Source: Octopus sinensis (lineage: Eukaryota). From it: 64,000 nt of DNA. The notes under the pieces are model-generated. The model did not search any database. It saw only the letters and a list, made by a program, of their open reading frames with translations, and was not told where the DNA came from. The DNA is taken from contig NC_043004.1 of the NCBI RefSeq assembly GCF_006345805.1, positions 69,750,001 to 69,814,000 on the forward strand, in the 5' to 3' direction. Below, in pieces: positions 43,991-61,366 of the stretch (position 1 is the stretch's first letter; every line of letters begins with the position of its first letter). The position numbers and the translations under genes are program-made.

Positions 43991-44209
43991 ATAATCCTTT
44001 CTACTATAGACACAAGGCCTGAAATTTTGGGAGCAGGAACTAGTCGATTACATCAACCCCAGTGTTGCATGGGTACTTAATTTATCGACCCTGAAAGAAT
44101 GAAAGGCTAAGTCGACCTTGGTGGAATTTGAACTCAGAACGCAAAGATGGATGAAATGCCACTAAGCATTTTGCCCAGCATGCTAACGATTCTGCCAGCT
44201 CCCTGCCTT
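43991..44209 (-). mobile_element. SINE family B variant
   Basis: Reverse complement of the family B head and core. Confidence 0.75.
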
Positions 44210-44271
44210 TGGGTGTCAAATGATAATGACATTCACGTACAATTAATTTAATGAGAAAAAGATTGAATTAC

Positions 44272-44439
44272 CTCCTCCATGTTTTTCACATAATCTCGGA
44301 ACCAGTCCTCTCGACGAGAACTACTTTCCACAGCTTTATATCTAGGATCGGAATCGATCTTTTTCTTGATTTCACTCCAGCGAGAATTACGTTCAATAAT
44401 TGAAGTCTCTTTCAGAAGCTGCATAAACTCGGCTTTCAA
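44272..44439 (-). CDS. TCERG1: TCERG1 FF3 exon LKAEFMQLLKETSIIERNSRWSEIKKKIDSDPRYKAVESSSRREDWFRDYVKNMEE
   Basis: ttacag acceptor, gag|gtaatt donor, 168 nt; W..K..DPRY..R..F signature. Confidence 0.97.
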
Positions 44440-46462
44440 CTGTAACGGAAAAACACTAAGATCAAGCCAGGCATATCAACTGAGTGGGAAGCAGAGAAAA
44501 AACTGAAAGAGAGCTGCACCACGCATATTATTTATTCACTGACATAAGGGACACAACTGACATGTTTAGCTGTGGAGAAATATATTATAGATAAAACAGC
44601 AAGGTTGAATTTTGTTATTAGTGCATGTATTGGTATGTGTGAGTGCATATGTGTATGTAGGAGTGAATGAGTGAGTGTGCACACATATTTCTGTAGAGAA
44701 ACAAGTTGAAATTCAAATTAAAAGCATTTTTCTTTCTTCTTCATTCTCATTTAATGTGAAAATATATTTGGATAATTCTCAAATATTGTCACAATGGTCA
44801 TGTTGCTGGTGCCACAATTAAGAAGAGAGGCAGCTGAGCAACAGTGCATAGCACAATTTATACAACTATACACAAAACAGCAATCAGAACAAATTAAACA
44901 ATGTTTAAGAAACAAAAGTCAAGTAAAATACCTGACCATGGTATTATATGTATAAACAATGTCTTGACAAATGTTAGGAGGGGAGAGAATCAGCTCTGAC
45001 CAATGGAACAGTGAATTTAGAGGCTGTATGATGACAGTGGAATAGCAAAAACGAAGAAAAAAAATATAACTCATCGTTTCACTTAGAACTAACTACAGAA
45101 TTTTAAATCCAAATGATTACAAACAGTAATGATTCTGTCAGACTAATTCTAAAAAGCTGAAAAGTAAAGAAAATTAAAAACAAAATCACACACATACAAA
45201 AATAAAAATAATCCCTAATATTTGTTACAAGAAAATAAACAATATAGCAATGGTAGCTTGTAAATTATATTTTACAAGAAAAAACAAAATGATCTTTTTT
45301 ACAAATTGAGATCTAAATGAACTTATTTGTCACCCATTTCTCCCAATATTTAAAAAGAAATTTCTATGTTCAAATCCATGAGAACGAAATCCATCATCAA
45401 CGAATATATCAATACCTGGCAAAACAACTTTTAGAAAGATAAAACTGAAATCAACAAAATTGAAGGAAATTATCTCAAATACTAGTTTCACGGTTGAACT
45501 GCCTATTAAAATGAATATGGGATGATTCCAAGCTATAAGAAATTAGTTAAAAACAATAGCATGAGCTACAAATTTTAAATTTGAATCCTAAGAAACACAG
45601 ACTGCATGTTACTGAAGTTAGCATTGCTATATTCCGTAGTTTCATACAAGCCTTCACTGAAACAGCCAGAGGTCAAAACGTAAGCTTCTCTTATCGGTTA
45701 ATTGAAGGAAAATGTGATAAGATGTCCAATGATGCTGAGAGAAATTATAATTTAAATCAACAAAACCATATAAATGAAATGCTTATGAAAGATGAAGGGG
45801 AAATAATAACAGTGAAGTAAATGCCTTGTAAACCTAACTTCTCAAGACTGAATGGAAATGATACTCAAACGAACTTTGTCTCAACTGACTTATTAAAGAA
45901 TGAAGAAGGAAGGCAAAAATGTTAGATCACCGGATAAAATGCCATGCACTGTTTGTTCAAATTCTTTGCATTGGGGGCCAATAAAATAAAGTACGAGTCA
46001 AGTTCTGAGGTAAATTAATTTCACTATTCTCCCTTCACCCCAGCTGCCATTCCCATCACCAAAATTTCACACCTTTTAAGTTACAAACAATTTGAGACAG
46101 TGATTTGGCAGAATCATAAGAGAGTCAAACCACTTTAGCAATATTTGATCTATTTACATTGTGAGTTCAAATCCCACGGAGGACAACACTGCCTTTCATT
46201 ACTCCAGGGATATGAAAGTACTAGTCATGCTCTGGTGTTAATATAATCAAATTTGTTTGCTTTGTGCATAAATTACAAAGATAAACAAATACACACAAGC
46301 GTGGCTGCGTGCTAAGAAGCTTACTTCCCAACATCACAGTTCCAGGTTCAGTCCCACAGTGTGGCCCCTTGGACAAGTGTCTTCTACTATAGCCCTGGGC
46401 TGGCCAAAGCCATGTGAGTGGGTTTGGTAGACAGAACCTGAAAGAAGCCCATCGTGTGTGTA

Positions 46463-46497
<35 letters not shown>

Positions 46498-47160
46498 GCG
46501 TGTGTATCTATATGTGTGTTCTGTCCTCCCATCAGTGCTTGACAACAACTGTTGGTTTGTTTATGTCCCCATAACTTAGCAGTTCGACAAGAGACCAAAC
46601 AAAAAGTACTAGGCTCAAGAAAAAGTCCCGGGGGTGGTTTGTTCAACTAAAACCCTCCAAAGTGGTGTTCTAGCATGGCTGCAGTCAGATGACTGAAACA
46701 AGTTAAAGAATAACGGAATAAAAGAATAATTACAGCTGTGGTTGTTTCTTCGTGGTACAGTTGCTTTATACCATGGATTGTAGAACGGACAGAAAAAGCA
46801 ATGGAACTCATTCATGTTTTGAGTGAGGTAAACAAATCGAAATTATAATTGAAGTTGTAATGTATAACAATCACATAACTCCAAATTATGTAACCACAAT
46901 TACTATTAATTACAGGTGAAGCACACCTGACCCAAAATCTACATTTAGTTAATAATTATTCACTAGAGAAAAATTTAAAAAATTTTTTAAATCCTTCTCT
47001 GTTCAAATCAATGCCTGATATTCAGATTAGTCCCACTGTTTATAGCTGACACTGCAAAGCTGTAAACAGAGACACACAGACAGACAGACACTACCTGCCA
47101 ATTAAAATGAGCAACTCAAGTAATGAAAGATATAGTAAAATATATAGGAACTCCTGTAAT

Positions 47161-47334
47161 TATGTGTGTGTGTATATCACACACACACACACATCTACAT
47201 ACATATGTATGTACGTACATATATATACTTTTATATATTTATGTATATATACACACACACGTACATATGTATACACACATGTACATACATATATATATAT
47301 ATATATATCTACACACACACATATATATATATCT

Positions 47335-47392
<58 letters not shown>

Positions 47393-47440
47393 ACATTATA
47401 CACACACACACACACACACACGTGTACATATATACATACA
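47161..47440. repeat. Compound (CA)n/(TA)n/(TG)n microsatellite
   Basis: Direct reading. Confidence 0.9.
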
Positions 47441-47442
47441 TA

Positions 47443-47666
47443 TGAAGGGGTGCTGAAAAATTCCTGGCTTTCAGGGTATTGCAAAAGACCTGGTTAGAAG
47501 TTCAACCTTTAAAATTTCTTTTACAGGGCTTAGAAAAACTGAAGAACTATTGCACCAAGAGTGTGAGTCTGAGAGGGGAATATGTTGAACAAAATCATTA
47601 ATCAACAGACCCTACTGCACTTTTTTTTTTTGTACACAAAGCTAAAAACTTTTCAGCACCCTCTCA
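47443..47666 (+). mobile_element. Mariner-derived MITE; second copy at 27685-27883
   Basis: GGGGTGCTGAAAA / TTTTCAGCACCC TIRs, TA flanks, residual GLEKL..RGEYVE transposase end. Confidence 0.75.
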
Positions 47667-48947
47667 TGCATATACACGTGTGTGCGTGCATGTGTGTGTG
47701 TATAAATATATATATATTCATGTATGTGTATATAGCAAAACCCAGAAATAAAATTTCCTATAATTTCCACCCATCAAGAGAAATTCAGTTTATTTTACGA
47801 ACTGCTCCAAAGCAACTGCCAAATACCACCACAGGCTTCACACCAATAGCAAAGTCATATTCATGAGAGGTACTGTTTTACAGCTTTCTCAAGCAGTGGC
47901 CAACAGTTTTAAAGCTTTAATATAGAGTAGAAATCAAAAGACATACAAGTCGCTAATTATAACAGCCAAACAATATCAAACAGTGAACAGACTCACATAC
48001 CAGCAATAAACATTGCTGTTGAGAGTGGGGGAGAAAAACCAAAAGTTTTCTAACATATTAACCAGTTTCCTAATAAGTCTCCAACTGAAGACAAAAACTG
48101 TCCAATAAAACTCTATATAGACCAAATAACAAAGTGAAATTCTATCCCCATAAAAAACATAATAAATCTTTTTTTTTTATATAACATTTTATAAACAGTC
48201 TACACAAAATAGACTTATTTATTCATTTCCTACCTGCTTCATTAGAAGAGATTTTTTTAAACCATTTTTCTTCAAAGAAATATCTGTTTTTAAGTCAATG
48301 ATTGTTAAACTTCTCAGACTATAAGCAAAAGGTAAAAAAAAATTACAAAATGAAATCAAGAACACCGAGTAACTGATAATAGTAGTAGTAGTGGTAAAGC
48401 TAACAACAGAGAAGAAAATCATTTTACAGAATTCATTACAATTAGGCAGTTGTTTGTAACGATTCATAAACATGTCTATTCTTGAGCATGACTTTTTAAG
48501 AACACTGTTTTCACACCACAAAGTACTGAATATATTTCAAAAAGTAGAGTGCTGTTATTTTTTTTTTTTGTCCCTTTTATAGAATTAATTCACTTTGCAG
48601 TTCCATGGGATTCATGTTCACAACTAATAATGAATAAGACTGAAATAGCATTAAATTGGTGTGTATGTTTCAATGTATGTGTATGAGTAAGTGTGTGTAT
48701 ATACCACATCAACATTTAATATCTGTTTTCCATGGTGCATGGGTTGAATGATTTGAGAGAAGAGGGCAAGGCCAGGAGCTACACCATGTTCCATTTTTTG
48801 TTTTCGCAAGGTTACTACAGTTGGATGCCCTTCCTAATGCTAACCACTTCACGGTGTGCCTTTTATGTGGCACTAGTGCTTTTTAGTGCCATACACACGC
48901 ACACCCACAGATATGCACACAGACACATGCATGTATCATTTTATGTA

Positions 48948-49742
48948 TTGGGTCATCCCATAAAGAACGTGGGTTTTTTTTCTCAACTGCATGAACTAAA
49001 AGTCAGAGAGAGACAGGATAAACTACCTGCATCAACTTGCTATAAAAGCAGGCAGTAATTTTACCTTCTACTTATTCTTAGTGCAAGTTTTGAAGAGTGC
49101 AGTTTGATTTTAACAATTATTTTTTCAAAGCTATAATGGAAGTGACAAAGGAACATGTTCAGCATATTTTGCTTTATGAGTTCAATAAAGGCAACAACAC
49201 AATGGAAAGTGTGAGGAATATTAATGCAGTATATGGGGATTGGACAGTAAGCTTAAGTCAGTGTCAATGGTTGTCTCAGAAATTCCGAGTGGAAAACTAC
49301 AGCCTAGAAAGTGACCCTTATCCTGGAAGATCTGTTGAGTTCAAAGAGGATGTCCTGCAAACCCTGGTGGAACAAAATCCCATCGTAACTGTTAAAGAAC
49401 TAGCAGAGAAGCTTGGATTTGGTCATTCAACTATTCGTTCAACACTTGCATTCCATTGGAAAAGTCAGCCAATTGGGTCATTGGGTTCCTCACTAACTTT
49501 CCAAAGTCTAATCGCATGCAGAGAGTGAATGTGTGCTCTTCTTTGCTGTTATATCTCACGAATGAACTCATTTTGGACCAAATAGCAACTGGTGATGAGA
49601 AATGGGTTCTCTATAAAAATGTTAAGCGCCAAAGACAGTGGGTAGGGAAATGCAAAACACCGGCACTCCAGGCTAAAGAAGGCTTTCACCCACTTAAGGT
49701 GTTTTTATCTGTTTGGTGGGATATGAAAGGTTTAGTCCACCT
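48948..49742 (+). pseudogene. Decayed, 3'-truncated mariner transposon
   Basis: TA + TTGGGTCATCCCATAAAG TIR; ATG at 49136, HTH region, WVPH*L (WVPHEL with a stop), TGDEKWVLY and VWWDMKG motifs spread over three frames. Confidence 0.92.
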
Positions 49743-51109
49743 CTAATCTTTAACTTCAATTTCTACAAAGACAGCTTTCTTTTCTGTGGAAAGGTGGTTT
49801 CCATAAAGCTTCGGAATTAGTTATGCTGTTGGATAAATAAAACTATTTATCTACACTTTTCTTTCATTCAATGTTGTTGTTTTTATTTTTAAGGACACTT
49901 AAAGATATTGTGCGTGTCAGGGTTTCTGACAGAGTCCCTATTGCTTTCATTTGAAAAATATTCATTTGAAAAATATTCAGGTCTTCCTGCAAGCCGTGTG
50001 TGTATGTGTTTCATATTGACAAAGAAAGCCCTAAGAAACTAAGGTAAGTTTAACTAACATGACATTAACAGAGAAAACACAAAGAAACTGATAACACAAT
50101 TTTACAGAATATCTAAGGCTACCCAGGAAGTACTTTAAAGAACCTTAATAATATCGGCTAACATTTGTAGAAAAATTAATTGACTTTGATATTTCGATAT
50201 TCATTTATTCTTTTGCTATTTAAAAAGGAGCAGGAGATTGTAGTTACACGCGTACCAACTTTAAAGTTACCTATTTCTAACAATATCGATGTAGGGAGAA
50301 AATAACAAAAACAAAAAATTTTTTTTAATTTGGCAATATACAAATTACACCAAAAATATGAAGATTTCAATATCAAAAGAAAAGGAGAGTTTTTCATTTT
50401 TTTTTTTCCCCTTTTCTTTTCTTTTGATTAAAATCCAAGTGAAGGCCAAAATATTTCTGAAAAACAAAAATGATTACAGTATTGGCAGCTCTCAGCTTTA
50501 CTCAGCTGTCTCTGGCCTGTGCTTTGGTTGAAGTTTTAATTGTAGAAGAAATAATAATAATAATAATATTCAATGAGATTCAAAGATTTCTACAGTTATA
50601 GACAAAAAGAAGCATTTTCTATTGTGGGTAATTTTGAAATTACTATTGTTTTCTCAACAGCTATGAGTTTAGTTTTTGTATGTATATATATTGTGTGAAA
50701 TAGTCTTGATGCCAACATATGTTAAGTTTATATGTACTTTTTCTTATTCAATAAATGAAAGTTTTAAATAAAACAAGGTAATACTTTGCATATTATCAGA
50801 TGAATATGATCAAATTCAATATTATCAAAAGTAGTTGATTTTGTTTTTACTCTCTTTATCAATTTGAAATTTTACAACTTGCTCATTTGTACTTAATTTG
50901 ATTGTCATTACAAACCGTAAAGATTGGAATGCAATTTTACGGTTGTTCTTATTGCAAATGTATGCTAATAACAAGTACAAAATAATTTTTAATCATTTTC
51001 GTTATATAAAATTACTCTTCAATGAGTTATATGTAGAAATAAATAAAATGCAATTTAATTGAATTTCTTTTATGTAAAAAAAAAAAACGTTTTCAATTAT
51101 CCTAGCCCA

Positions 51110-51592
51110 AATGCATATATATGTACACATGTATGTGTATATATATATATATACATACATACACATATATAAACATACATACATGTGTAAAAATATACAC
51201 ATATATACATTAACACACACACAAACTTGTATACATATGCATATACATACACATATATACACACAAATATAGACATACAAACATATATATATACATAGAC
51301 TTCTGCATACATAACTACATGCATAACATCTACACACATACACATATGTACATAAATATATGCACATACATAAGCAAATATGCACACACATATGCATACG
51401 TACACATATACACAGACACAGATATATATACACACATACCTACATATGTAAATACATACATATACATATGTATATACATATATGTACATATATGCATATG
51501 TACATACATACATTATACATATACATGCATACATGCATGCATACATACATACATACATACATGTATGTATATTTGCATGCATGTATATATGT
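51110..51592. repeat. Degenerate (CATA/TA/CA)n microsatellite
   Basis: Direct reading. Confidence 0.9.
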
Positions 51593-54500
51593 GTATTAAA
51601 GTATTGATATTTTTCACTGTTTGAATGTAAAGTATATTGGCATTACTGCAAAACAGCTATTATTCATGAAATTAATAATCACATTACAAGCTCACCATAC
51701 GTTGAATGATTAGGAATTAAAGATTTAAATGGTCAAAATATTTCAATCATTACTACTAGCTACAAATAATTATGTGAAACATATAAACAAACATACTGGA
51801 ACATGATACAGTAGCTAAAACAATACATGTGGAACTTGTCACTTGCAAAGTACAAAAGTTAAATGGTGAATGCCCACACAAACACCATAAAAATACTGCA
51901 CAAACTGGATAGATATAAATGTCTATCTTAAAACATATACACATAAGTTTGTAAGGATGATATTTAACAGATTAATAATTTCAAAAAATACACATGGGAT
52001 GGAGAAATGGATAAAATCAATTGAAATAACATATCTGTTCTCCATGAACTTGGTTTTAAGCAAATGAAAACAATGTTGAGATATAATATATCGAAATGAA
52101 TGTTGTATTAAAGAAATACCTCTAGATAGATAGATAGATAGATATGTCTAACAGGCTGCTTTGAATCAATTTTCTTCCCATAACAAAATTATCAATTTGT
52201 CTCTTGCAAATTTTACAACTTATAATTATTAAAATAAAGTACAAATAAGTGAAAGTCCGAGTCCATTTCTAACTGAGCAGTTTGTAAAACAAATATGTAT
52301 TTATAAAATCGTTTACACTATGGGTAAACCAATTTCTCTTTTAGACTTAATCCTTCCTTGTTAGTTAATTTTAAAAACATCCTATCTGATTTATGACTGG
52401 AGACCAAACGAAAATGAAAGAACCTTTTTTTTTTTGTCATAACAAAATTTTTTTTCAATTTCATTATGAAGAAATTAAAAAAATAAATTCAAGATTTTAG
52501 TCAGAGCCTGTAATCTGAAAGTGTTGTTTCTGTGTACATGAATGCCAATGCATAGATAGACAAACACACATGCATGCAGCACAGGATAAGTGGTCTTTCT
52601 GCTCATCAAACTCACAAGCCTGACAAACCTTTCCGTTTAAGTGGTTCATAAAAACACTAACAATGCTGACATATTGATATCCCAATTAAAAATATTATGG
52701 TTTGAACAAAAATCAAGTCCATGGAGATAAGATATGAATGTATAGAACATTTTAGAAGTAAACAACCAGCACATGAATCTCTTGAGAAATACAAGGCCAA
52801 TATTGGTTTCACAAGAATCACTCGTTTTTATCTGCAAGTGACTCTAGACTGCTGGTGGCATAAAGAGTGGAAACATTCACACACCAACATACTAAGATTT
52901 ATAAGTAATCTCACACAATGAACCAAGTTTACTAATTTTAATATGTAAACTTCAACTTAATATGACAGGGTCATTCCATACACAAAAAGAAAAGTAACAA
53001 AAAAAAAAAGTCACTATCAATATGTTTAATAATTATTTAGTTAACTACAAAGTTTTAGATATTCAAAGAGATTACAGAACTGAAGGCTACAAAACATACT
53101 AAAACATAATGTTATTTTAGCAAGATTGTATTAATTTAAAATAATTGTCAATGTTAATAAAAGATGTTAACTGAGAACAATAGAAATTGCCGTTTAGTGC
53201 CAACTGAATATTTTAAGTTAAATATCTTTGTAACATCAACTGATATTAGTTTGGTTTTGTCAGTTTTAATATGAGCCACAAGGAATAATTATGCAAAATA
53301 TTAAAATTGCACATAATATAAATTCAATTGTAAAAGAAAATGGGCTCGTTAGCTTTGATTTATTGTTTTGATTTTTTACTTAAATTTGATTATAAATAAG
53401 TTGCAGAAGTTTCTATTAAAAGTGAAATTACAAGTGAAAAATGTAAACTACAGCTAAAAGTAGTTCTAAAAATTAAACATGGCAAAATTACTTACATGCA
53501 GATGGAATATCATTCAAAAAAGATTCTAAAAGTTGACACGACTAATACATTATTATCATATGCAAATATTTTAAACTAACAACTATTAAGAAATTATAGA
53601 AATATAAGGCATTAAATTTAACATTTAATATTAACTTTTAATAAAAACTTAACTAAATATCTATATATTTATGTGGAACCTTTTTAAAAAAAAAAGATTA
53701 AAAAATGAAAATTACAAAATTTTCTAACAGTTATTATTGTTATTATTATTATGACATGGAATGGAATGACCCCAATTAGATTATCATGTAAAAACCCTAA
53801 CAAAGTTCATTCAAACAAAAGATACAGAAGAAACAAATACCAGTCACTGATATAGCCTATTGGCTATGTATGCGCCAGAGCAATTCGTCTGGAATGGCTG
53901 ACGAAATATCCATAACTCAATGCAACTGAGACTGCACATCGACAAATTCAACCTCGGGCCTTACTTGACTGTAACTGCAAGGCTTTCTTTTGAAAGGGAC
54001 ATAAAATTATTCATCAGAAAAATATTGAAACTCAAACACTTTTTAAATAGTTAGAACATCATAAAAATTGGGTTGACTTGCAGTTCACCAGCCTCTTGTG
54101 TTAAATACAACATCACAGATAGAACAGCTGCTCTAACAAGTTTTAAACCTATTCTAGATACATATATATATATACATATGAGAGTTACAACTATGAAGAT
54201 TACTAACTAATAAAATACACTTAAATTATTTAGATGGAAACTGATAATAATTATTACTTTCTTATTTAAAGTTCATTATAATGATATTTTTAAAATTGTT
54301 CATTTATTTACAGTTCCTCAATAAAGCTAATTATAAAATTATGCTTAATATAAACATTTACTTAGAATTTAATAAACTTATTTTAAAAAATTAAGGAAAT
54401 GAATTATCATAGATACTATATTTTATCTCATTTAACAGTTAACAGAAATAACTAAAAACCTAGTAAAAATTCATTTTAAATATTAAAAGTATGTGATGTA

Positions 54501-55777
54501 TAAAATATTTATATGTAAAAAAAAAGCAAAAGAAAAATTTAAAAAATAAAAAACTTATCTCTAGCGACTGGCAAACTGCAATCTACCCAAACATTCTTAT
54601 GAACACTTACAATTTTAACAAATGTGAGAACAGTTACAAAATTACTTCAGTGAAAAGCTTATTGGAATGAGTTACACTTATTAAGAAGTAGATTGGTTCT
54701 TTACTGAGAAATTGCCAGGTACATAGCATAATGAGGGATTTACAAAAGATGAATTATATAGTTAGATTACTATTACTCTCAAGATAAAGTGCACATTTAG
54801 TAAGTAATATTACAGAATTCCAAACCGTTAATATTTCACGGGGGGGAAAAAAATGTGACAATTACTGAAAATACTAATGACCTTTACTGACTTACTAATT
54901 GCTTGTGTAACTAAAAAATTTCATATCATGCAACAATATTTATTATTATTATTTATTATTATCATTATTATATAACCAAGTAATGTCAGTTAATAGAGGT
55001 TGAATCAGTTGCCTTATCTGTGATTAAAATATTTAATACAAAAATAAGAAAAAATATTTTATAAAAAGACACAGGTGTATGTTGCATTGGAAATACAAGA
55101 TATATATATATATCATTAATGTGAAAGCACTTAACATGTAGAACAATGAAATCCAATGCATTAAACATGGGTGAGATAGCAAAAAAAAGAAATATATATA
55201 TATACATGTTCACATAGCCTTCAACTTTCAGCTCATTATGATTAATGATTGTTATTATTATCATCATTATTATAAGTAAAATGAGTCTGGGAGTCAAACA
55301 TAAGAACTAACAGAGTATAACATTTTAGAAAATACAAGAAGGCATGAAAAATGTTATTTGGAGAAGATTCCTGAAAACAATAGATATCATTAGATTATAT
55401 ATAATAAAAACAAAAAGAAAAGGTTTTTTTTTTCAACCCAGACTGCAAGCAGAAGCTGAAAGGAAACAAGGAATCGGCCAATTCAAAGGTTGTTTCATAT
55501 AATAGACATACTTTTTTTTTCTTTTTTACATTATTTTGATATATATATACTCTGTATACTCGTTTCCTAGTCAAAGATGGGCTAAAACATTCATTAAATT
55601 TATCTGTTCAAGCAATTATGTTTCTCTTTGGAATTTGAGGAATTAAAGAATTACAAGAATAAAATAATATAAATGAAGAACAAGGAAAAAATATATATAT
55701 AATATTAATATATATATATATATATATATGTATGTATAACCAGGTCAGCTGCTAACACACCAACTTTAAACACATAC

Positions 55778-55928
55778 CCTCTCTTTCTGGGTAGACTTCT
55801 CTTCTTTCTCCTTTTTGCGAAGTTCAGATACATAATCACTGAACATAGATTCACGCTCTCTCATCTTTTCAATCCCCTTGAAACGTTCGTCTTTACCATA
55901 TTTAGCTGCAAAATCACTGAAAGATGAC
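55778..55928 (-). CDS. TCERG1: TCERG1 exon SSFSDFAAKYGKDERFKGIEKMRERESMFSDYVSELRKKEKEEKSTQKER (end of FF2)
   Basis: tttttcag acceptor, agg|gtatgt donor; FF-domain pattern. Confidence 0.97.
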
Positions 55929-56238
55929 CTGAAAAAACAAGCAAAAGAAAAGCACAAAGTTAGAAATAAGATCCAAAATTCTGTTTCACCAACAAATCAC
56001 GCCTACAACCGACAGAAAAAGCCGTGTTCTTCTGCCATAACTAATGAAAAATGTAAGAGAAATTGCTAAAATATATATAGATGCAGGCATGGCTGAGTGA
56101 TAAGAAGCTTGCTTCACAATTACATGGTTCCAGGTTCAGTCCTATTGTGTGGCACCTCAAGCAAGTGCTTTCTACTATAGCCCCAGCCCAACCAAAGCCT
56201 TGCAAGTGGATTTGACAAATGGAAACTGAAAGAAGGCC

Positions 56239-56280
<42 letters not shown>

Positions 56281-56847
56281 TTCCCCTCCCCAATCATTGT
56301 TTGAGAAGTGGTTTGAGAATGTTTACATCCCTGTAACTTAGCTGTTTGGGAAATGAGACCAATACAATAAGTACGAGGTTTTAAAAATAAGGTAGGGGTC
56401 GTTTTGTTCTACTAAAATCCTTTAAGCAGTGCTCCAGCATGGCTGCAGTCAAATGACCGAAACAGATAAAAGGATACAGAATTAATAATGTTAGCACTAT
56501 GATAAATAAAATGATGTCTGTTCTGTAGGCTGTTGCTGGTATGAAGAGGATTGTGCCATAAATCATTTGCCTACAAAGAGGATGCAATCCAGAAATGATG
56601 AAGAAATGCACTATTCTATGGACAAAGCTGAGATTTGAACTAGTGACCTTATGGTCAGCAGTACAGAAACCTTAGCTCAATATGCCCAAGGAACCAATGG
56701 AAAGAAAATTAGTTGCACTTAAAAGCAGTGTATGCAATTTCTATCAAAGATATAGAAATTTCATGAAAAGGAGAGAAAAACCCTAAATAAATCAAGGCAG
56801 GATATAAGATACGTTGGACTATAAAGCTACAAATGGACTGCACTTAC

Positions 56848-60975: not shown

Positions 60976-61217
60976 AAGTTGAGACAAGATGGAAGATGAA
61001 ATATTTCAGATCTGACACTTTAAGAGAATATGCAAATTTGAGCACAACGTTGAGCAAAATGTAAAGAGATGATATGACTCAACATAAGGAGGTATGTCAA
61101 AATGCTGGATATGCTACAAAAACCATTTAAGCCAATGGCAGTGACACACATTTTCACTTCACTAAATTCTTAGAGGACTTAAACTTGGTTTAAATATTCC
61201 AATAAGCATATATTTAC

Positions 61218-61366
61218 TTTTATCAGCTGGAGAGCCACCTGGTGGACCTTGTAGCATTCGTTCAACATCTGCACGACCAACAAGTCCTTCAGGTTTTTCC
61301 CAAACAGAAAGATGCTGACTAGGATTATAGAAGAAAACTCGGCCATCTCCAGTCCAAACAACACAC
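61218..61366 (-). CDS. TCERG1: TCERG1 WW3 exon [49 protein letters not shown]
   Basis: WW signature W..VFFYN..W..P; acag acceptor, a|gtaaat donor, phases 2 to 1. Confidence 0.97.

What the first reader, a model, noticed from the sequence alone, without database searches (positions are those of the whole stretch)
49750..55777. Six-kb transposon-free, U-rich block after the FF2 exon: candidate intronic-polyadenylation isoform resembling TCERG1L
Seen: reading through the donor at 55777 gives KEEKSTQKER-VCV* (TAA at 55768-55766). The next 6 kb or so has no recognisable SINE or MITE, unlike other introns here with roughly one per kb. It is U-rich on the sense strand and has AATAAA signals at 54957, 54943, 54308, 50209 and 49887 (minus strand). 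Known: the vertebrate paralogue TCERG1L ends shortly after its second FF domain, and splicing factors often autoregulate through unproductive or truncated isoforms. Inference: one cephalopod gene may make both a six-FF and a two-FF protein, the latter with a long regulatory 3'UTR.
Basis: partly seen in the sequence, partly recalled or inferred. Interest (0 to 1): 0.72.

Follow-up and report, generated by a model that had tools for sequence, protein, structure and literature searches.

The report
Conserved stop-codon exon inside octopus TCERG1 intron
The repeat-free stretch after the second FF domain exon of the octopus TCERG1 gene is real and conserved, but it looks like a splicing-control region around an ancient stop-codon-carrying alternative exon, not a hidden 3'UTR made by early polyadenylation.

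Summary
The window is Octopus sinensis TCERG1, on the minus strand. Reading through the donor gives VCV then a stop. The block is T-rich, and it is the longest repeat-free run in 125 kb (6.3 kb, P about 0.001). However, sense-strand AATAAA is rarer than composition predicts, and no poly(A) hexamer is conserved in Argonauta. The VCV stop is not conserved either, and the databases hold no cephalopod short isoform.

The block is the first half of an 11.3-kb intron and aligns in the same order with Argonauta hians. Its core is a 341-nt element, 54097-53757, that is 97% identical. Coding exons are 88% identical and four-fold sites 63%. The core has acceptor AGs, an in-frame TGA and a conserved CTG|GTAT donor. 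It has a significant match in the same intron of abalone. A profile built from it hits an annotated alternative exon of the limpet Patella.

RNA contigs from oyster-like, heterobranch and other molluscs carry stop-containing cassettes exactly between the FF2 and FF3 exons.

Best reading (confidence about 0.55): a conserved poison or alternative exon with its regulatory intron. It would give an unproductive or FF2-truncated isoform. Use of the exon in octopus is inferred, not shown.

The parts
55778..55930 (-). TCERG1 exon that completes FF2 (SSFSDFAAKYGK...KEEKSTQKER), ending in phase 0
   Evidence: Sequence read. tblastn of Octopus TCERG1 proteins P0121-P0126 covers the exon; the 96% HSP identity comes from the HSP running into the flanking junctions.
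55766..55777 (-). Donor GT (55777-55776) and read-through codons GTA TGT GTT TAA (VCV then stop)
   Evidence: Argonauta has GTATGTGTTCAAATG at this place, so its read-through tail is 35 residues.
44440..55777 (-). The complete FF2-FF3 intron, 11,338 nt, the longest intron in the window
   Evidence: Exon mapping. The same intron is about 12.2 kb in Argonauta, 4.9 kb and the longest in scallop, about 5 kb in Patella, and 3.5 kb in Haliotis, where it is not the longest.
49754..56066 (.).
   Evidence: Longest repeat-free run in 124.8 kb, P about 0.001. The orthologous Argonauta stretch is also the longest repeat-free run of that locus (3,788 nt).
55687..55777 (-). Conserved intron flank of about 91 nt just downstream of the FF2 donor
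   Evidence: The BLAST HSP 55931-55687 against Argonauta extends 91 nt past the exon. Exon flanks facing other introns extend 39 nt or less.
55209..55499 (-). Conserved island 1
   Evidence: 67% identity over 326 columns to Argonauta, E 1e-17, in the same order.
53742..54946 (-). Main conserved segment of about 1.2 kb, which contains the ultraconserved core
   Evidence: HSPs 54946-54823 and 54824-53742. The second is 72.6% identical over 1,099 columns, E 2e-160.
53757..54097 (-). Ultraconserved core, 341 nt
   Evidence: 318 of 327 aligned bases (97.2%) are identical to Argonauta. Coding exons are 88% identical and four-fold sites 63% (69 of 110). Best hit in the Haliotis locus lies in the same intron and on the same strand, E 2.4e-5. 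No Rfam match. Folding z-scores are about 0 on both strands.
53841..53986 (-). Candidate stop-carrying alternative exon. Possible first bases are 53986, 53974 or 53968, all in the same frame. The last base is 53841, before GT at 53840-53839. Length 146, 134 or 128 nt, each 2 mod 3.
   Evidence: Coordinates and translations ...KER-(KALQ)(LQ)SSKARG* (the 53986 acceptor and its KALQ- start are my reading of that sequence). The CTG|GTAT donor motif is shared by Octopus, Argonauta, Haliotis and Patella. A profile of the element hits the annotated Patella alternative exon, E 0.0055. Use of the exon in Octopus is inferred.
53948..53950 (-). In-frame TGA within the CGAGGTTGA motif
   Evidence: The same GGTTGA with the stop in frame is present in Argonauta and Haliotis and in the L008 cassette (...SYRG*). 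The oyster-like cassette has CGAGGTTAG (...LRG*).
53959..53964 (-). Consensus-like 5' splice-site motif CAA|GTAAGG, 4 nt after the TTACAG acceptor
   Evidence: identical in Argonauta. Its role is unknown. It could be a decoy U1 site or a micro-exon donor. Use as a 4- or 10-nt exon would also shift the frame.
52712..53051 (-). Conserved island 2
   Evidence: 72% identity over 354 columns, E 2e-47, with perfect runs of 30-40 nt.
53761..53772 (-). Arm 1 (GGGTCATTCCAT) of a 12-nt perfect inverted pair, at the 3' edge of the core
   Evidence: identical in Argonauta at L006 35555.
52968..52979 (-). Arm 2 (ATGGAATGACCC) of the inverted pair, inside island 2
   Evidence: identical in Argonauta at L006 36306. 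This is a post-hoc observation with no covariation to test it.
51957..52091 (-). Conserved island 3
   Evidence: 79% identity over 136 columns, E 1e-24.
50411..50490 (-). Conserved island 4, the last one in order
   Evidence: 75% identity over 83 columns, E 2.5e-7.
51100..51600 (.). Imperfect TG/TA-rich microsatellite inside the block
   Evidence: Sequence. It is the source of all the sub-threshold Rfam 'miRNA' hits.
44440..44598 (-). Conserved 159-nt intron flank upstream of the FF3 acceptor
   Evidence: HSP 44598-44257 against Argonauta, 82% identity.
44272..44439 (-). FF3 exon (LKAEFMQLLKE...), the normal splice partner of the FF2 exon
49097..49746 (+). Mariner/Mos1-type transposase remnant that bounds the block
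   Evidence: Pfam HTH_48 E 3.9e-14 and Transposase_1 E 8.4e-11. A second copy lies upstream in the gene.

Best explanation
The block is the constrained first half of the FF2-FF3 intron of Octopus sinensis TCERG1. It stays free of transposons and aligns with Argonauta because it carries a splicing-control module. At the centre is a 341-nt ultraconserved element containing an alternative exon (about 53986/53974/53968 to 53841). When spliced between the FF2 and FF3 exons, this exon puts a TGA in frame 6-12 codons after FF2 and also shifts the frame.

The resulting mRNA would either be removed by nonsense-mediated decay, lowering TCERG1 output (homeostatic or regulated unproductive splicing), or be translated into a protein with three WW domains and two FF domains. 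The other conserved islands, the long conserved flanks at the FF2 donor and FF3 acceptor, and possibly a conserved 12-nt complementary pair would be the elements that set how often the exon is included.

Shown: repeat exclusion; same-order conservation; the ultraconserved core; its significant match in the same intron of Haliotis and a weaker profile match (E 0.0055) to the annotated Patella exon; and stop-bearing cassettes at this junction in RNA of other molluscs.

Inferred: that the octopus element is actually spliced in, the choice of splice sites, sensitivity to nonsense-mediated decay, and any feedback by TCERG1 itself.
For: 1. The repeat-free run is the longest in 124.8 kb, P about 0.001. 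The orthologous Argonauta region is also the longest repeat-free run in its locus.
2. About 2.1 of 6.0 kb aligns in the same order with Argonauta at E < 1e-5. Other introns align only within 39 nt of exons. The FF2-donor and FF3-acceptor flanks are conserved for 91 and 159 nt.
3. The core is 97.2% identical, against 88% for exons and 63% at four-fold sites.
4. The core holds three same-frame AG acceptors, an in-frame TGA and a CTG|GTAT donor. The donor motif and the GGTTGA stop are shared with Haliotis. The octopus-Haliotis hit has E 2.4e-5 and lies in the same intron on the same strand.
5. A profile of Octopus, Argonauta and Haliotis hits the RefSeq-annotated alternative exon of Patella vulgata, E 0.0055. 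RefSeq splits the Patella gene exactly there.
6. Spliced RNA contigs carry stop-containing cassettes exactly between the FF2 and FF3 exons. They come from oyster-like runs (three contigs with the full cassette and a fourth cut at its end), from L008, and from L009, where the FF3-FF6 frame follows immediately. Arion P0026 shows the same pattern. Tails: RRHLRG*, MKRCRSVSYRG*, KRMESSRSCRACA*, KRMKASGSCRQRG*.
7. There is no Rfam family and no unusual folding, which argues against a structured RNA gene.
8. TCERG1 links transcription and splicing. Ultraconserved poison exons are the known pattern for such genes (established knowledge: Lareau 2007, Ni 2007; animal-wide examples are mentioned in PMC13100119).
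Against: - There is no transcript evidence from any cephalopod. No junction could be examined, and no cephalopod protein ending in the predicted tail is in the databases.
- The proposed donor GTATTT is weak compared with the donors this gene uses, and the acceptor is ambiguous.
- Direct similarity between the octopus core and the L008 RNA cassette is not significant on its own: rank 6-29 of 622 windows, and local scores at shuffle level.
- No homologue was found in the scallop intron.
- The link to transcripts therefore runs through Haliotis and Patella, at E 2.4e-5 and E 0.0055.
- TCERG1 is not known to bind RNA, so direct self-regulation is speculative.
- Only two octopod species give the 97% figure. 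With so few substitutions, neither coding nor structural constraint can be tested.
Confidence: 0.55

Rival explanations
1. Some transcripts fail to splice at 55777, read into the intron, stop after VCV and are cleaved and polyadenylated within the block. This would give a two-FF protein with a long regulatory 3'UTR.
For: - The in-frame stop after 3 codons is real.
- The block resembles the true 3'UTR region in being AT-rich and repeat-free.
- The 91 nt after the donor are conserved.
- RefSeq isoforms in Limulus (P0245, P0323) and Armigeres (P0011) read through the same donor, and mollusc RNA contig L001 reads about 370 nt into this intron.
Against: - Sense-strand AATAAA occurs 6 times against 10.6 expected and 15 on the antisense strand. 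Its density is 1.0 per kb against 2.6 per kb in the real 3'UTR region.
- None of the 17 AATAAA/ATTAAA sites is conserved in Argonauta.
- The read-through stop is not conserved.
- Conservation is patchy and peaks in an exon-like element 1.7-2 kb downstream.
- All annotated Octopus and Argonauta isoforms splice on to FF3.
- Read-through ORFs at exon ends are common database artefacts of intron retention or of ORF calling on genomic DNA. They are also seen at the neighbouring LHGK junction.
Confidence: 0.12
2. The block is a cluster of conserved non-coding DNA elements: enhancers, or an internal promoter for TCERG1 or a neighbouring gene. It would act at the DNA level and have nothing to do with RNA processing.
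For: - Transposon-free conserved blocks are typical of regulatory DNA, and several separate islands are conserved.
- There is no transcript evidence in octopus.
- Some gene models start at FF3: Sepia P0312 and Patella XP_050398332.2.
Against: - The core carries splice-site motifs and an in-frame stop that are shared with Haliotis on the sense strand.
- Its profile matches a transcribed, annotated exon in Patella.
- Cassettes at this junction are seen within otherwise continuous mRNAs (L009, L003).
- The conserved intron flanks lie at exactly the two splice sites that border this intron.
- TCERG1 is a broadly expressed housekeeping-type gene (established knowledge).
Confidence: 0.17
3. The core encodes an independent small or long non-coding RNA, or an antisense transcript, hosted in the intron.
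For: Very high conservation without an obvious ORF. Introns often host snoRNAs and miRNAs, and cephalopods have many novel miRNAs (general knowledge).
Against: - No Rfam match at E <= 1 in the core. All hits lie in the microsatellite and are below threshold.
- Folding energy is no better than shuffles on either strand, z -0.03 and +0.43.
- 341 nt of continuous conservation is longer than a snoRNA or miRNA.
Confidence: 0.06
4. Nothing functional. The region would be a chance gap between transposon insertions, in an AT-rich stretch that aligns because of low complexity or a slow local mutation rate.
For: AT-rich sequence inflates alignment identity. Global alignment gives 40-50% identity even in unconserved parts. 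Self-similarity detects only repeat families with two or more copies in 125 kb.
Against: - P about 0.001 for the run length.
- The same repeat-poor state is seen in Argonauta.
- E values down to 2e-160, with 97% identity in the GC-richer core, while four-fold sites are 63% identical.
- Other AT-rich introns of the gene give no hits.
Confidence: 0.03

Closest known systems
Ultraconserved poison exons of splicing regulators (SR protein and hnRNP genes; Lareau et al. 2007, Ni et al. 2007; established knowledge)
   Same: An intron of an RNA-processing gene holds an element more conserved than the coding exons. The element has splice sites and an in-frame stop. Inclusion would give a premature stop far upstream of the last exon junction. 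The flanking intron is conserved for about 100 nt on each side.
   Different: The host is TCERG1, a WW/FF adaptor that is not known to bind RNA, so direct self-regulation is not expected. The lineage is molluscan. Inclusion and decay have not been shown in octopus. The element sits in a 6-kb transposon-free, multi-island block, much larger than typical poison-exon footprints.
Animal-wide conserved splicing-control elements: the SF3B3 poison exon and the ENOX1/Enox ultraconserved pseudo-5' splice site (PMC13100119)
   Same: Short intronic or exonic RNA motifs, in the same intron across very distant animals, are tied to an alternative event that decides between a productive and a stop-containing mRNA. 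The octopus core also contains an unused-looking consensus 5' splice-site motif (CAA|GTAAGG).
   Different: TCERG1 does not appear in the main text of that paper. Conservation here is shown only within molluscs (cephalopod, vetigastropod, patellogastropod). The role of the GTAAGG motif is untested.
Unproductive splicing controlled by pairs of conserved complementary regions (BRD2/BRD3; PMC10789245, title and abstract listed)
   Same: A conserved 12-nt perfect complementary pair (53772-53761 and 52979-52968) lies just downstream of the candidate exon, and both arms are identical in Argonauta.
   Different: About one such pair is expected by chance in 6 kb. The finding is post hoc and there is no covariation. 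That paper was not read beyond its abstract.
Intronic polyadenylation with composite terminal exons (established knowledge)
   Same: Read-through of the FF2 donor meets a stop after 3 codons. Annotated arthropod isoforms end this way at the same exon.
   Different: There is no enriched or conserved poly(A) signal, the stop is not conserved, and there is no 3'-end evidence.
Vertebrate TCERG1L (paralogue; domain content recalled from memory, not tested here)
   Same: A product of either the cassette or the read-through would keep the WW domains and FF1-FF2 and lack FF3-FF6.
   Different: TCERG1L is a separate gene. Here any such product would be a splice isoform that is likely subject to decay. 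No sequence comparison with TCERG1L was possible.
Transposon-free regions and conserved non-coding element clusters (Simons et al. 2006; general knowledge)
   Same: A run of more than 5 kb without transposons, in a genome where about a third of the local sequence is repeats. It is conserved between genera.
   Different: Such regions usually flank developmental transcription factors and act on DNA. This one lies in an intron of an RNA-processing gene and is centred on an exon-like element.

Membership tests
Intronic polyadenylation isoform (composite terminal exon) | In-frame stop soon after the unspliced donor | tested here: met
   VCV then TAA at 55768-55766. It is not conserved, since Argonauta has a 35-residue tail.
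Intronic polyadenylation isoform (composite terminal exon) | Poly(A) signal hexamers present above background on the sense strand | tested here: not met
   AATAAA 6 observed against 10.6 expected, with 15 on the antisense strand. ATTAAA 11 against 12.1 expected.
Intronic polyadenylation isoform (composite terminal exon) | Poly(A) site conserved in related species | tested here: not met
   None of the 17 hexamers is conserved at the aligned Argonauta position.
Intronic polyadenylation isoform (composite terminal exon) | Transcripts with 3' ends and poly(A) tails inside the intron | not testable with these tools
   No RNA-seq or 3'-end data were available. No cephalopod protein with this end is in the collections.
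Conserved poison (stop-carrying) cassette exon | Exon-like anatomy inside an intron of the main isoform: acceptor AG with an upstream pyrimidine and branch-like tract, and a donor GT | tested here: met
   AGs precede 53986, 53974 and 53968. CTGAT lies at about 54017-54013. The donor is CTG|GTATTT at 53841|53840. The donor is weak compared with the donors this gene uses.
Conserved poison (stop-carrying) cassette exon | Premature stop in the frame set by the upstream exon, far upstream of the last exon junction | tested here: met
   TGA at 53950-53948 is in frame for all three acceptors. The exon length is 2 mod 3. Seven more exons lie downstream.
Conserved poison (stop-carrying) cassette exon | Exon and flanks conserved more strongly than neutral sequence | tested here: met
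   97.2% identity against 63% at four-fold sites. The homologue is in the same intron of Haliotis, E 2.4e-5.
Conserved poison (stop-carrying) cassette exon | Observed inclusion in spliced RNA | tested here: inconclusive
   Not observable for octopus. It is seen at the same junction in oyster-like, L008 and L009 RNA contigs and in Arion. The octopus element is linked to the annotated Patella exon by a profile hit, E 0.0055. The direct octopus-L008 match is not significant.
Conserved poison (stop-carrying) cassette exon | Isoform stabilised when nonsense-mediated decay is blocked, and feedback on the gene's own level | not testable with these tools
   This needs an experiment.
TCERG1 orthologue (host gene) | WW domains followed by six FF domains, and orthology to annotated TCERG1 | tested here: met
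   Window exons match O. sinensis, O. vulgaris and O. bimaculoides TCERG1 proteins at 100%. Precomputed Pfam domains are WW, WW_TCERG1 and FF. The window is 100% identical to the O. sinensis chromosome record.
TCERG1L-like two-FF protein | A stable protein ending shortly after FF2 | not tested
   The predicted tails are 3 residues (read-through) or 6-12 residues (cassette). Translation and stability are unknown.
Structured non-coding RNA gene | Match to a known family, or folding better than shuffled sequence | tested here: not met
   No Rfam hit in the core. Folding z-scores are -0.03 and +0.43.

The most novel reading that the evidence does not exclude
The FF2|FF3 junction of TCERG1 carries an unproductive-splicing switch more than 500 million years old. 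The same stop-bearing exon (GGTTGA/TAG, giving ...RG*) would be retained from cephalopods to gastropods and probably bivalves. In octopods it is embedded in a 341-nt ultraconserved element and a 6-kb transposon-excluded regulatory intron. If part of the isoform escapes decay, protostomes would make by splicing the WW-plus-two-FF protein that vertebrates are said to encode as the separate gene TCERG1L. The truncated isoforms annotated at the same junction in arthropods hint that the switch could be older than molluscs.
Probability: 0.35. Interest if true: 0.7.

Novelty: new member of a known kind. Interest (0 to 1): 0.55.

Why it matters
Poison exons in ultraconserved elements are the classic way splicing regulators keep their own levels steady, but nearly all well-studied cases are vertebrate SR and hnRNP genes. 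I found no paper linking TCERG1 to a poison exon or an ultraconserved element.

If the reading is right, TCERG1, a factor that couples transcription elongation to splicing, joins that class. The element would be traceable between cephalopods and gastropods, which is a rare depth of non-coding conservation for invertebrates. It would also give cephalopod genomics a concrete, testable example of why some introns resist the transposon load of these genomes. Finally, it would give a defined handle (exon skipping or forced inclusion) for changing TCERG1 dosage in molluscs.

For the scan, it shows that a 'transposon-free intron block' is a useful flag, but that composition-driven poly(A) hexamers are not.

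Tried and rejected
1. Rfam scan of 44000-56500 at E <= 1. It gave only sub-threshold 'miRNA' and snoRNA hits in the TG/TA microsatellites at 47.2-47.7 kb and 51.1-51.6 kb, and nothing in the conserved core.
2. RNA folding of the core on both strands was no better than shuffles.
3. I first took the shared CGAGGTT(A/G) plus stop as proof that the oyster cassette and the octopus core are homologous. Unbiased local alignment of the L008 cassette against the whole window, and a window-by-window ranking, showed the direct match is not significant. The oyster cassette can also be aligned to a different part of the L008 exon. I therefore rest homology on the Haliotis and Patella genomic matches.
4. 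The scallop FF2-FF3 intron has no detectable homologue of the oyster cassette, the octopus core or the profile.
5. Three protein searches for a cephalopod isoform ending after FF2, covering representative lengths of 99-315, 426-1353 and about 530-1690 residues, found none. The 779-residue O. bimaculoides entry is an N-terminally short full-length form, not a two-FF isoform.
6. Two exact-pattern scans of JGI metagenome contigs, one for the core and one for the FF2 exon, found nothing.
7. The global MAFFT alignment of the block misplaced a 1.4-kb gap near the donor. I used BLAST-anchored alignments instead.
8. The inverted-repeat tool output was swamped by microsatellite pairs, so the 12-nt pair was located by direct search.
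9. Logan protein P0316 begins with MIQ in place of the expected residues. No matching sequence lies between 44000 and 64000 of the window, and the matter stays unexplained.
10. Literature searches for TCERG1 with 'poison exon', TCERG1 with 'ultraconserved', and TCERG1L with 'FF domains' returned nothing usable.

Full report
**What the window is.** The minus strand carries the 3' two-thirds of a TCERG1 gene. Exons read from the sequence match TCERG1 proteins of Octopus bimaculoides, O. sinensis and O. vulgaris at 100%. The window is 100% identical over 31 kb to O. sinensis chromosome record CM016866.1 (locus L011).

The next coding exon (FF3, LKAEFMQLLKE...) starts at 44439. The intron is therefore 55777-44440, 11.3 kb, the longest in the window.

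**Checking the observation.**
- Read-through of the donor gives GTA TGT GTT TAA, as stated.
- Self-BLAST of the window shows no repeat coverage from 49001 to 56000.
- I joined L011 to the rest of the window to make 124.8 kb, of which 31% lies in intra-locus repeats. The longest repeat-free run is 56066-49754 (6,313 nt). The runner-up (3,807 nt) is the region just downstream of the stop codon, 32666-28860.
- Random placement of the 159 repeat blocks gives a gap this long in 0.06% of trials. An exponential model gives 0.13%.
- The longest stop-free pieces of the block have no transposon domains. The lower boundary is a mariner/Mos1 transposase remnant.
- The sense strand is 40% T.
- The poly(A) hexamers do not hold up. 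There are 6 AATAAA against 10.6 expected from a first-order model of the block, and 15 on the antisense strand. Density is below half that of the real 3'UTR region.

**Comparison with another octopod.** The Argonauta hians orthologue (L006) has the same exon structure and an intron of about 12.2 kb at the same place.
- BLAST of the whole window against it finds exons. Outside them it finds a same-order series of hits confined to this block: 55931-55687, 55499-55209, 54946-53742 (E 2e-160), 53051-52712, 52091-51957 and 50490-50411. There is also a 159-nt flank upstream of the FF3 acceptor.
- Exon flanks facing other introns are conserved for at most 39 nt.
- The Argonauta counterpart is also that locus's longest repeat-free run.
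- None of the 17 sense AATAAA/ATTAAA hexamers is conserved at its aligned position.
- The read-through tail is 35 residues in Argonauta instead of 3.

**The core.** Within the 1.2-kb hit lies a 341-nt stretch, 54097-53757, with 318 of 327 aligned bases identical (97.2%). The coding exons of the same gene are 88% identical and their four-fold degenerate sites 63%. The core has no Rfam match and folds no better than shuffles on either strand.

Read on the sense strand, it contains the following:
- a CTGAT branch-like motif and the tract TGTCCCTTTC;
- three AGs, with possible exon first bases at 53986, 53974 and 53968, all in one frame;
- a consensus-like CAA|GTAAGG;
- the motif CGAGGTTGA, whose TGA (53950-53948) is in the frame set by the FF2 exon;
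- a donor-like CTG|GTATTT (exon end 53841).

Any use of these sites gives a premature stop, and the exon length is 2 mod 3.

**Evidence from other molluscs.** The protein searches turned up RNA-derived sequences that carry an insert with a stop exactly between the FF2 and FF3 exons.
- Oyster-like Logan contigs have a cassette of about 57-58 nt (tail RRHLRG*). Three contigs hold the whole cassette and a fourth is cut at its end.
- L008, from an unidentified mollusc, has a cassette of about 137 nt (tail MKRCRSVSYRG*) followed by the FF3 exon.
- L009, a heterobranch-like metatranscriptome contig, has a cassette of about 55 nt (tail KRMESSRSCRACA*), with the FF3-FF6 frame immediately after it.
- The slug Arion has the related tail KRMKASGSCRQRG*.
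- In Patella vulgata, RefSeq ends one model in an alternative exon inside this intron and starts a second model at FF3. P. caerulea has the normal 1,014-residue protein.

The octopus core has its best match in the 34-kb Haliotis asinina locus inside the FF2-FF3 intron, on the sense strand (E 2.4e-5), with an adjacent same-order second hit. The GGTTGA stop, TCTCAGTTGCA and CTGGTAT are shared. A profile of Octopus, Argonauta and Haliotis hits the annotated Patella alternative exon as its top match (E 0.0055).

I could not show significant direct similarity between the octopus core and the RNA cassettes themselves. The scallop intron has no detectable counterpart. The chain from the octopus element to an expressed exon is therefore indirect.

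**Interpretation.** The most economical reading is a conserved alternative exon carrying a stop, surrounded by the intronic elements that regulate it. Purifying selection against insertions would explain the transposon-free state. The outcome would be an unproductive mRNA or a protein truncated after FF2.

I put this at about 0.55.

A conserved 12-nt complementary pair just downstream of the candidate exon may point to long-range RNA pairing of the kind described for BRD2/BRD3 (listed). It is a post-hoc observation.

**Limits.**
- No cephalopod RNA data could be examined.
- Searches found no cephalopod protein ending after FF2. Few cephalopod transcript contigs are indexed, and short fragments cluster under full-length representatives.
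- The statement about TCERG1L domain content rests on memory and was not tested.

**Known or new.** Ultraconserved poison exons in RNA-processing genes are a known kind. Animal-wide examples, the SF3B3 poison exon and the ENOX1 pseudo-5' splice site, are described in PMC13100119, which does not mention TCERG1 in its main text. Full-text searches found no paper pairing TCERG1 with 'poison exon' or 'ultraconserved'. I therefore rate this a new member of a known kind, of moderate to good interest, pending transcript evidence.

Noticed in passing
window 49097-49746 (+); L011 24250-24960: A mariner/Mos1-type transposase remnant (HTH_48 and a partial DDE domain) forms the lower edge of the repeat-free block. 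A second copy, 84% identical, lies upstream in the same gene.
   Followed up: yes
window 53772-53761 and 52979-52968 (-); L006 35555 and 36306: A perfect 12-nt complementary pair (GGGTCATTCCAT / ATGGAATGACCC) lies at the 3' edge of the ultraconserved core and in the next conserved island. Both arms are identical in Argonauta. It may be a long-range RNA pairing. About one such pair is expected by chance in 6 kb.
   Followed up: partly
window 51100-51600 and 47150-47750: Imperfect TG/TA microsatellites produce dozens of sub-threshold Rfam 'miRNA' hits (mir-297, mir-466, mir-3149 and others). These are compositional noise.
   Followed up: yes
L002-L005 (for example L003 516-1121): The oyster-like RNA contigs that carry the cassette also keep an intron of about 600 nt just upstream of the FF1 exon. 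These may be detained or incompletely processed transcripts.
   Followed up: no
Proteins P0245 and P0323 (Limulus), P0011 (Armigeres), P0271 and P0259 (beetles): Annotated or assembled arthropod TCERG1 forms also end right after FF2. Some read through the donor (tails starting with V). Others have different tails, and one cluster has 139 members. The FF2|FF3 junction may be a truncation hotspot beyond molluscs.
   Followed up: partly
L010 8001-28822 and 30480-35658 (Patella vulgata): RefSeq splits TCERG1 into two gene models exactly at this intron. The first (763 residues) ends in the alternative exon and the second (305 residues) starts at FF3.
   Followed up: yes
Proteins P0312 (Sepia pharaonis, contig 27.9 kb), P0315-P0317 (Logan): Cephalopod members hidden inside the cluster of P0123 start at or just before FF3. 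Their contigs could show what lies upstream (the element, the cassette or plain intron), but look-ups were exhausted. P0316 starts with MIQ in place of the expected residues, which is unexplained.
   Followed up: partly
window 32666-28860; 32285-31897: The region downstream of the TCERG1 stop codon (TAA at 33647-33645) is the second-longest repeat-free run. Part of it is conserved with Argonauta, so it is probably a long 3'UTR.
   Followed up: partly
window about 59636-59539 and 61219-61213: A small conserved exon between the WW3 exon and the pre-FF1 exon, and a donor choice near 61213-61219, appear to account for the 7-8-residue differences between O. sinensis isoforms X1 and X4. This is ordinary alternative splicing.
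   Followed up: no
Protein P0059 (Myxine glutinosa isoform X2): A hagfish isoform joins FF2 directly to the FF5/FF6 region, skipping the middle FF domains.
   Followed up: no
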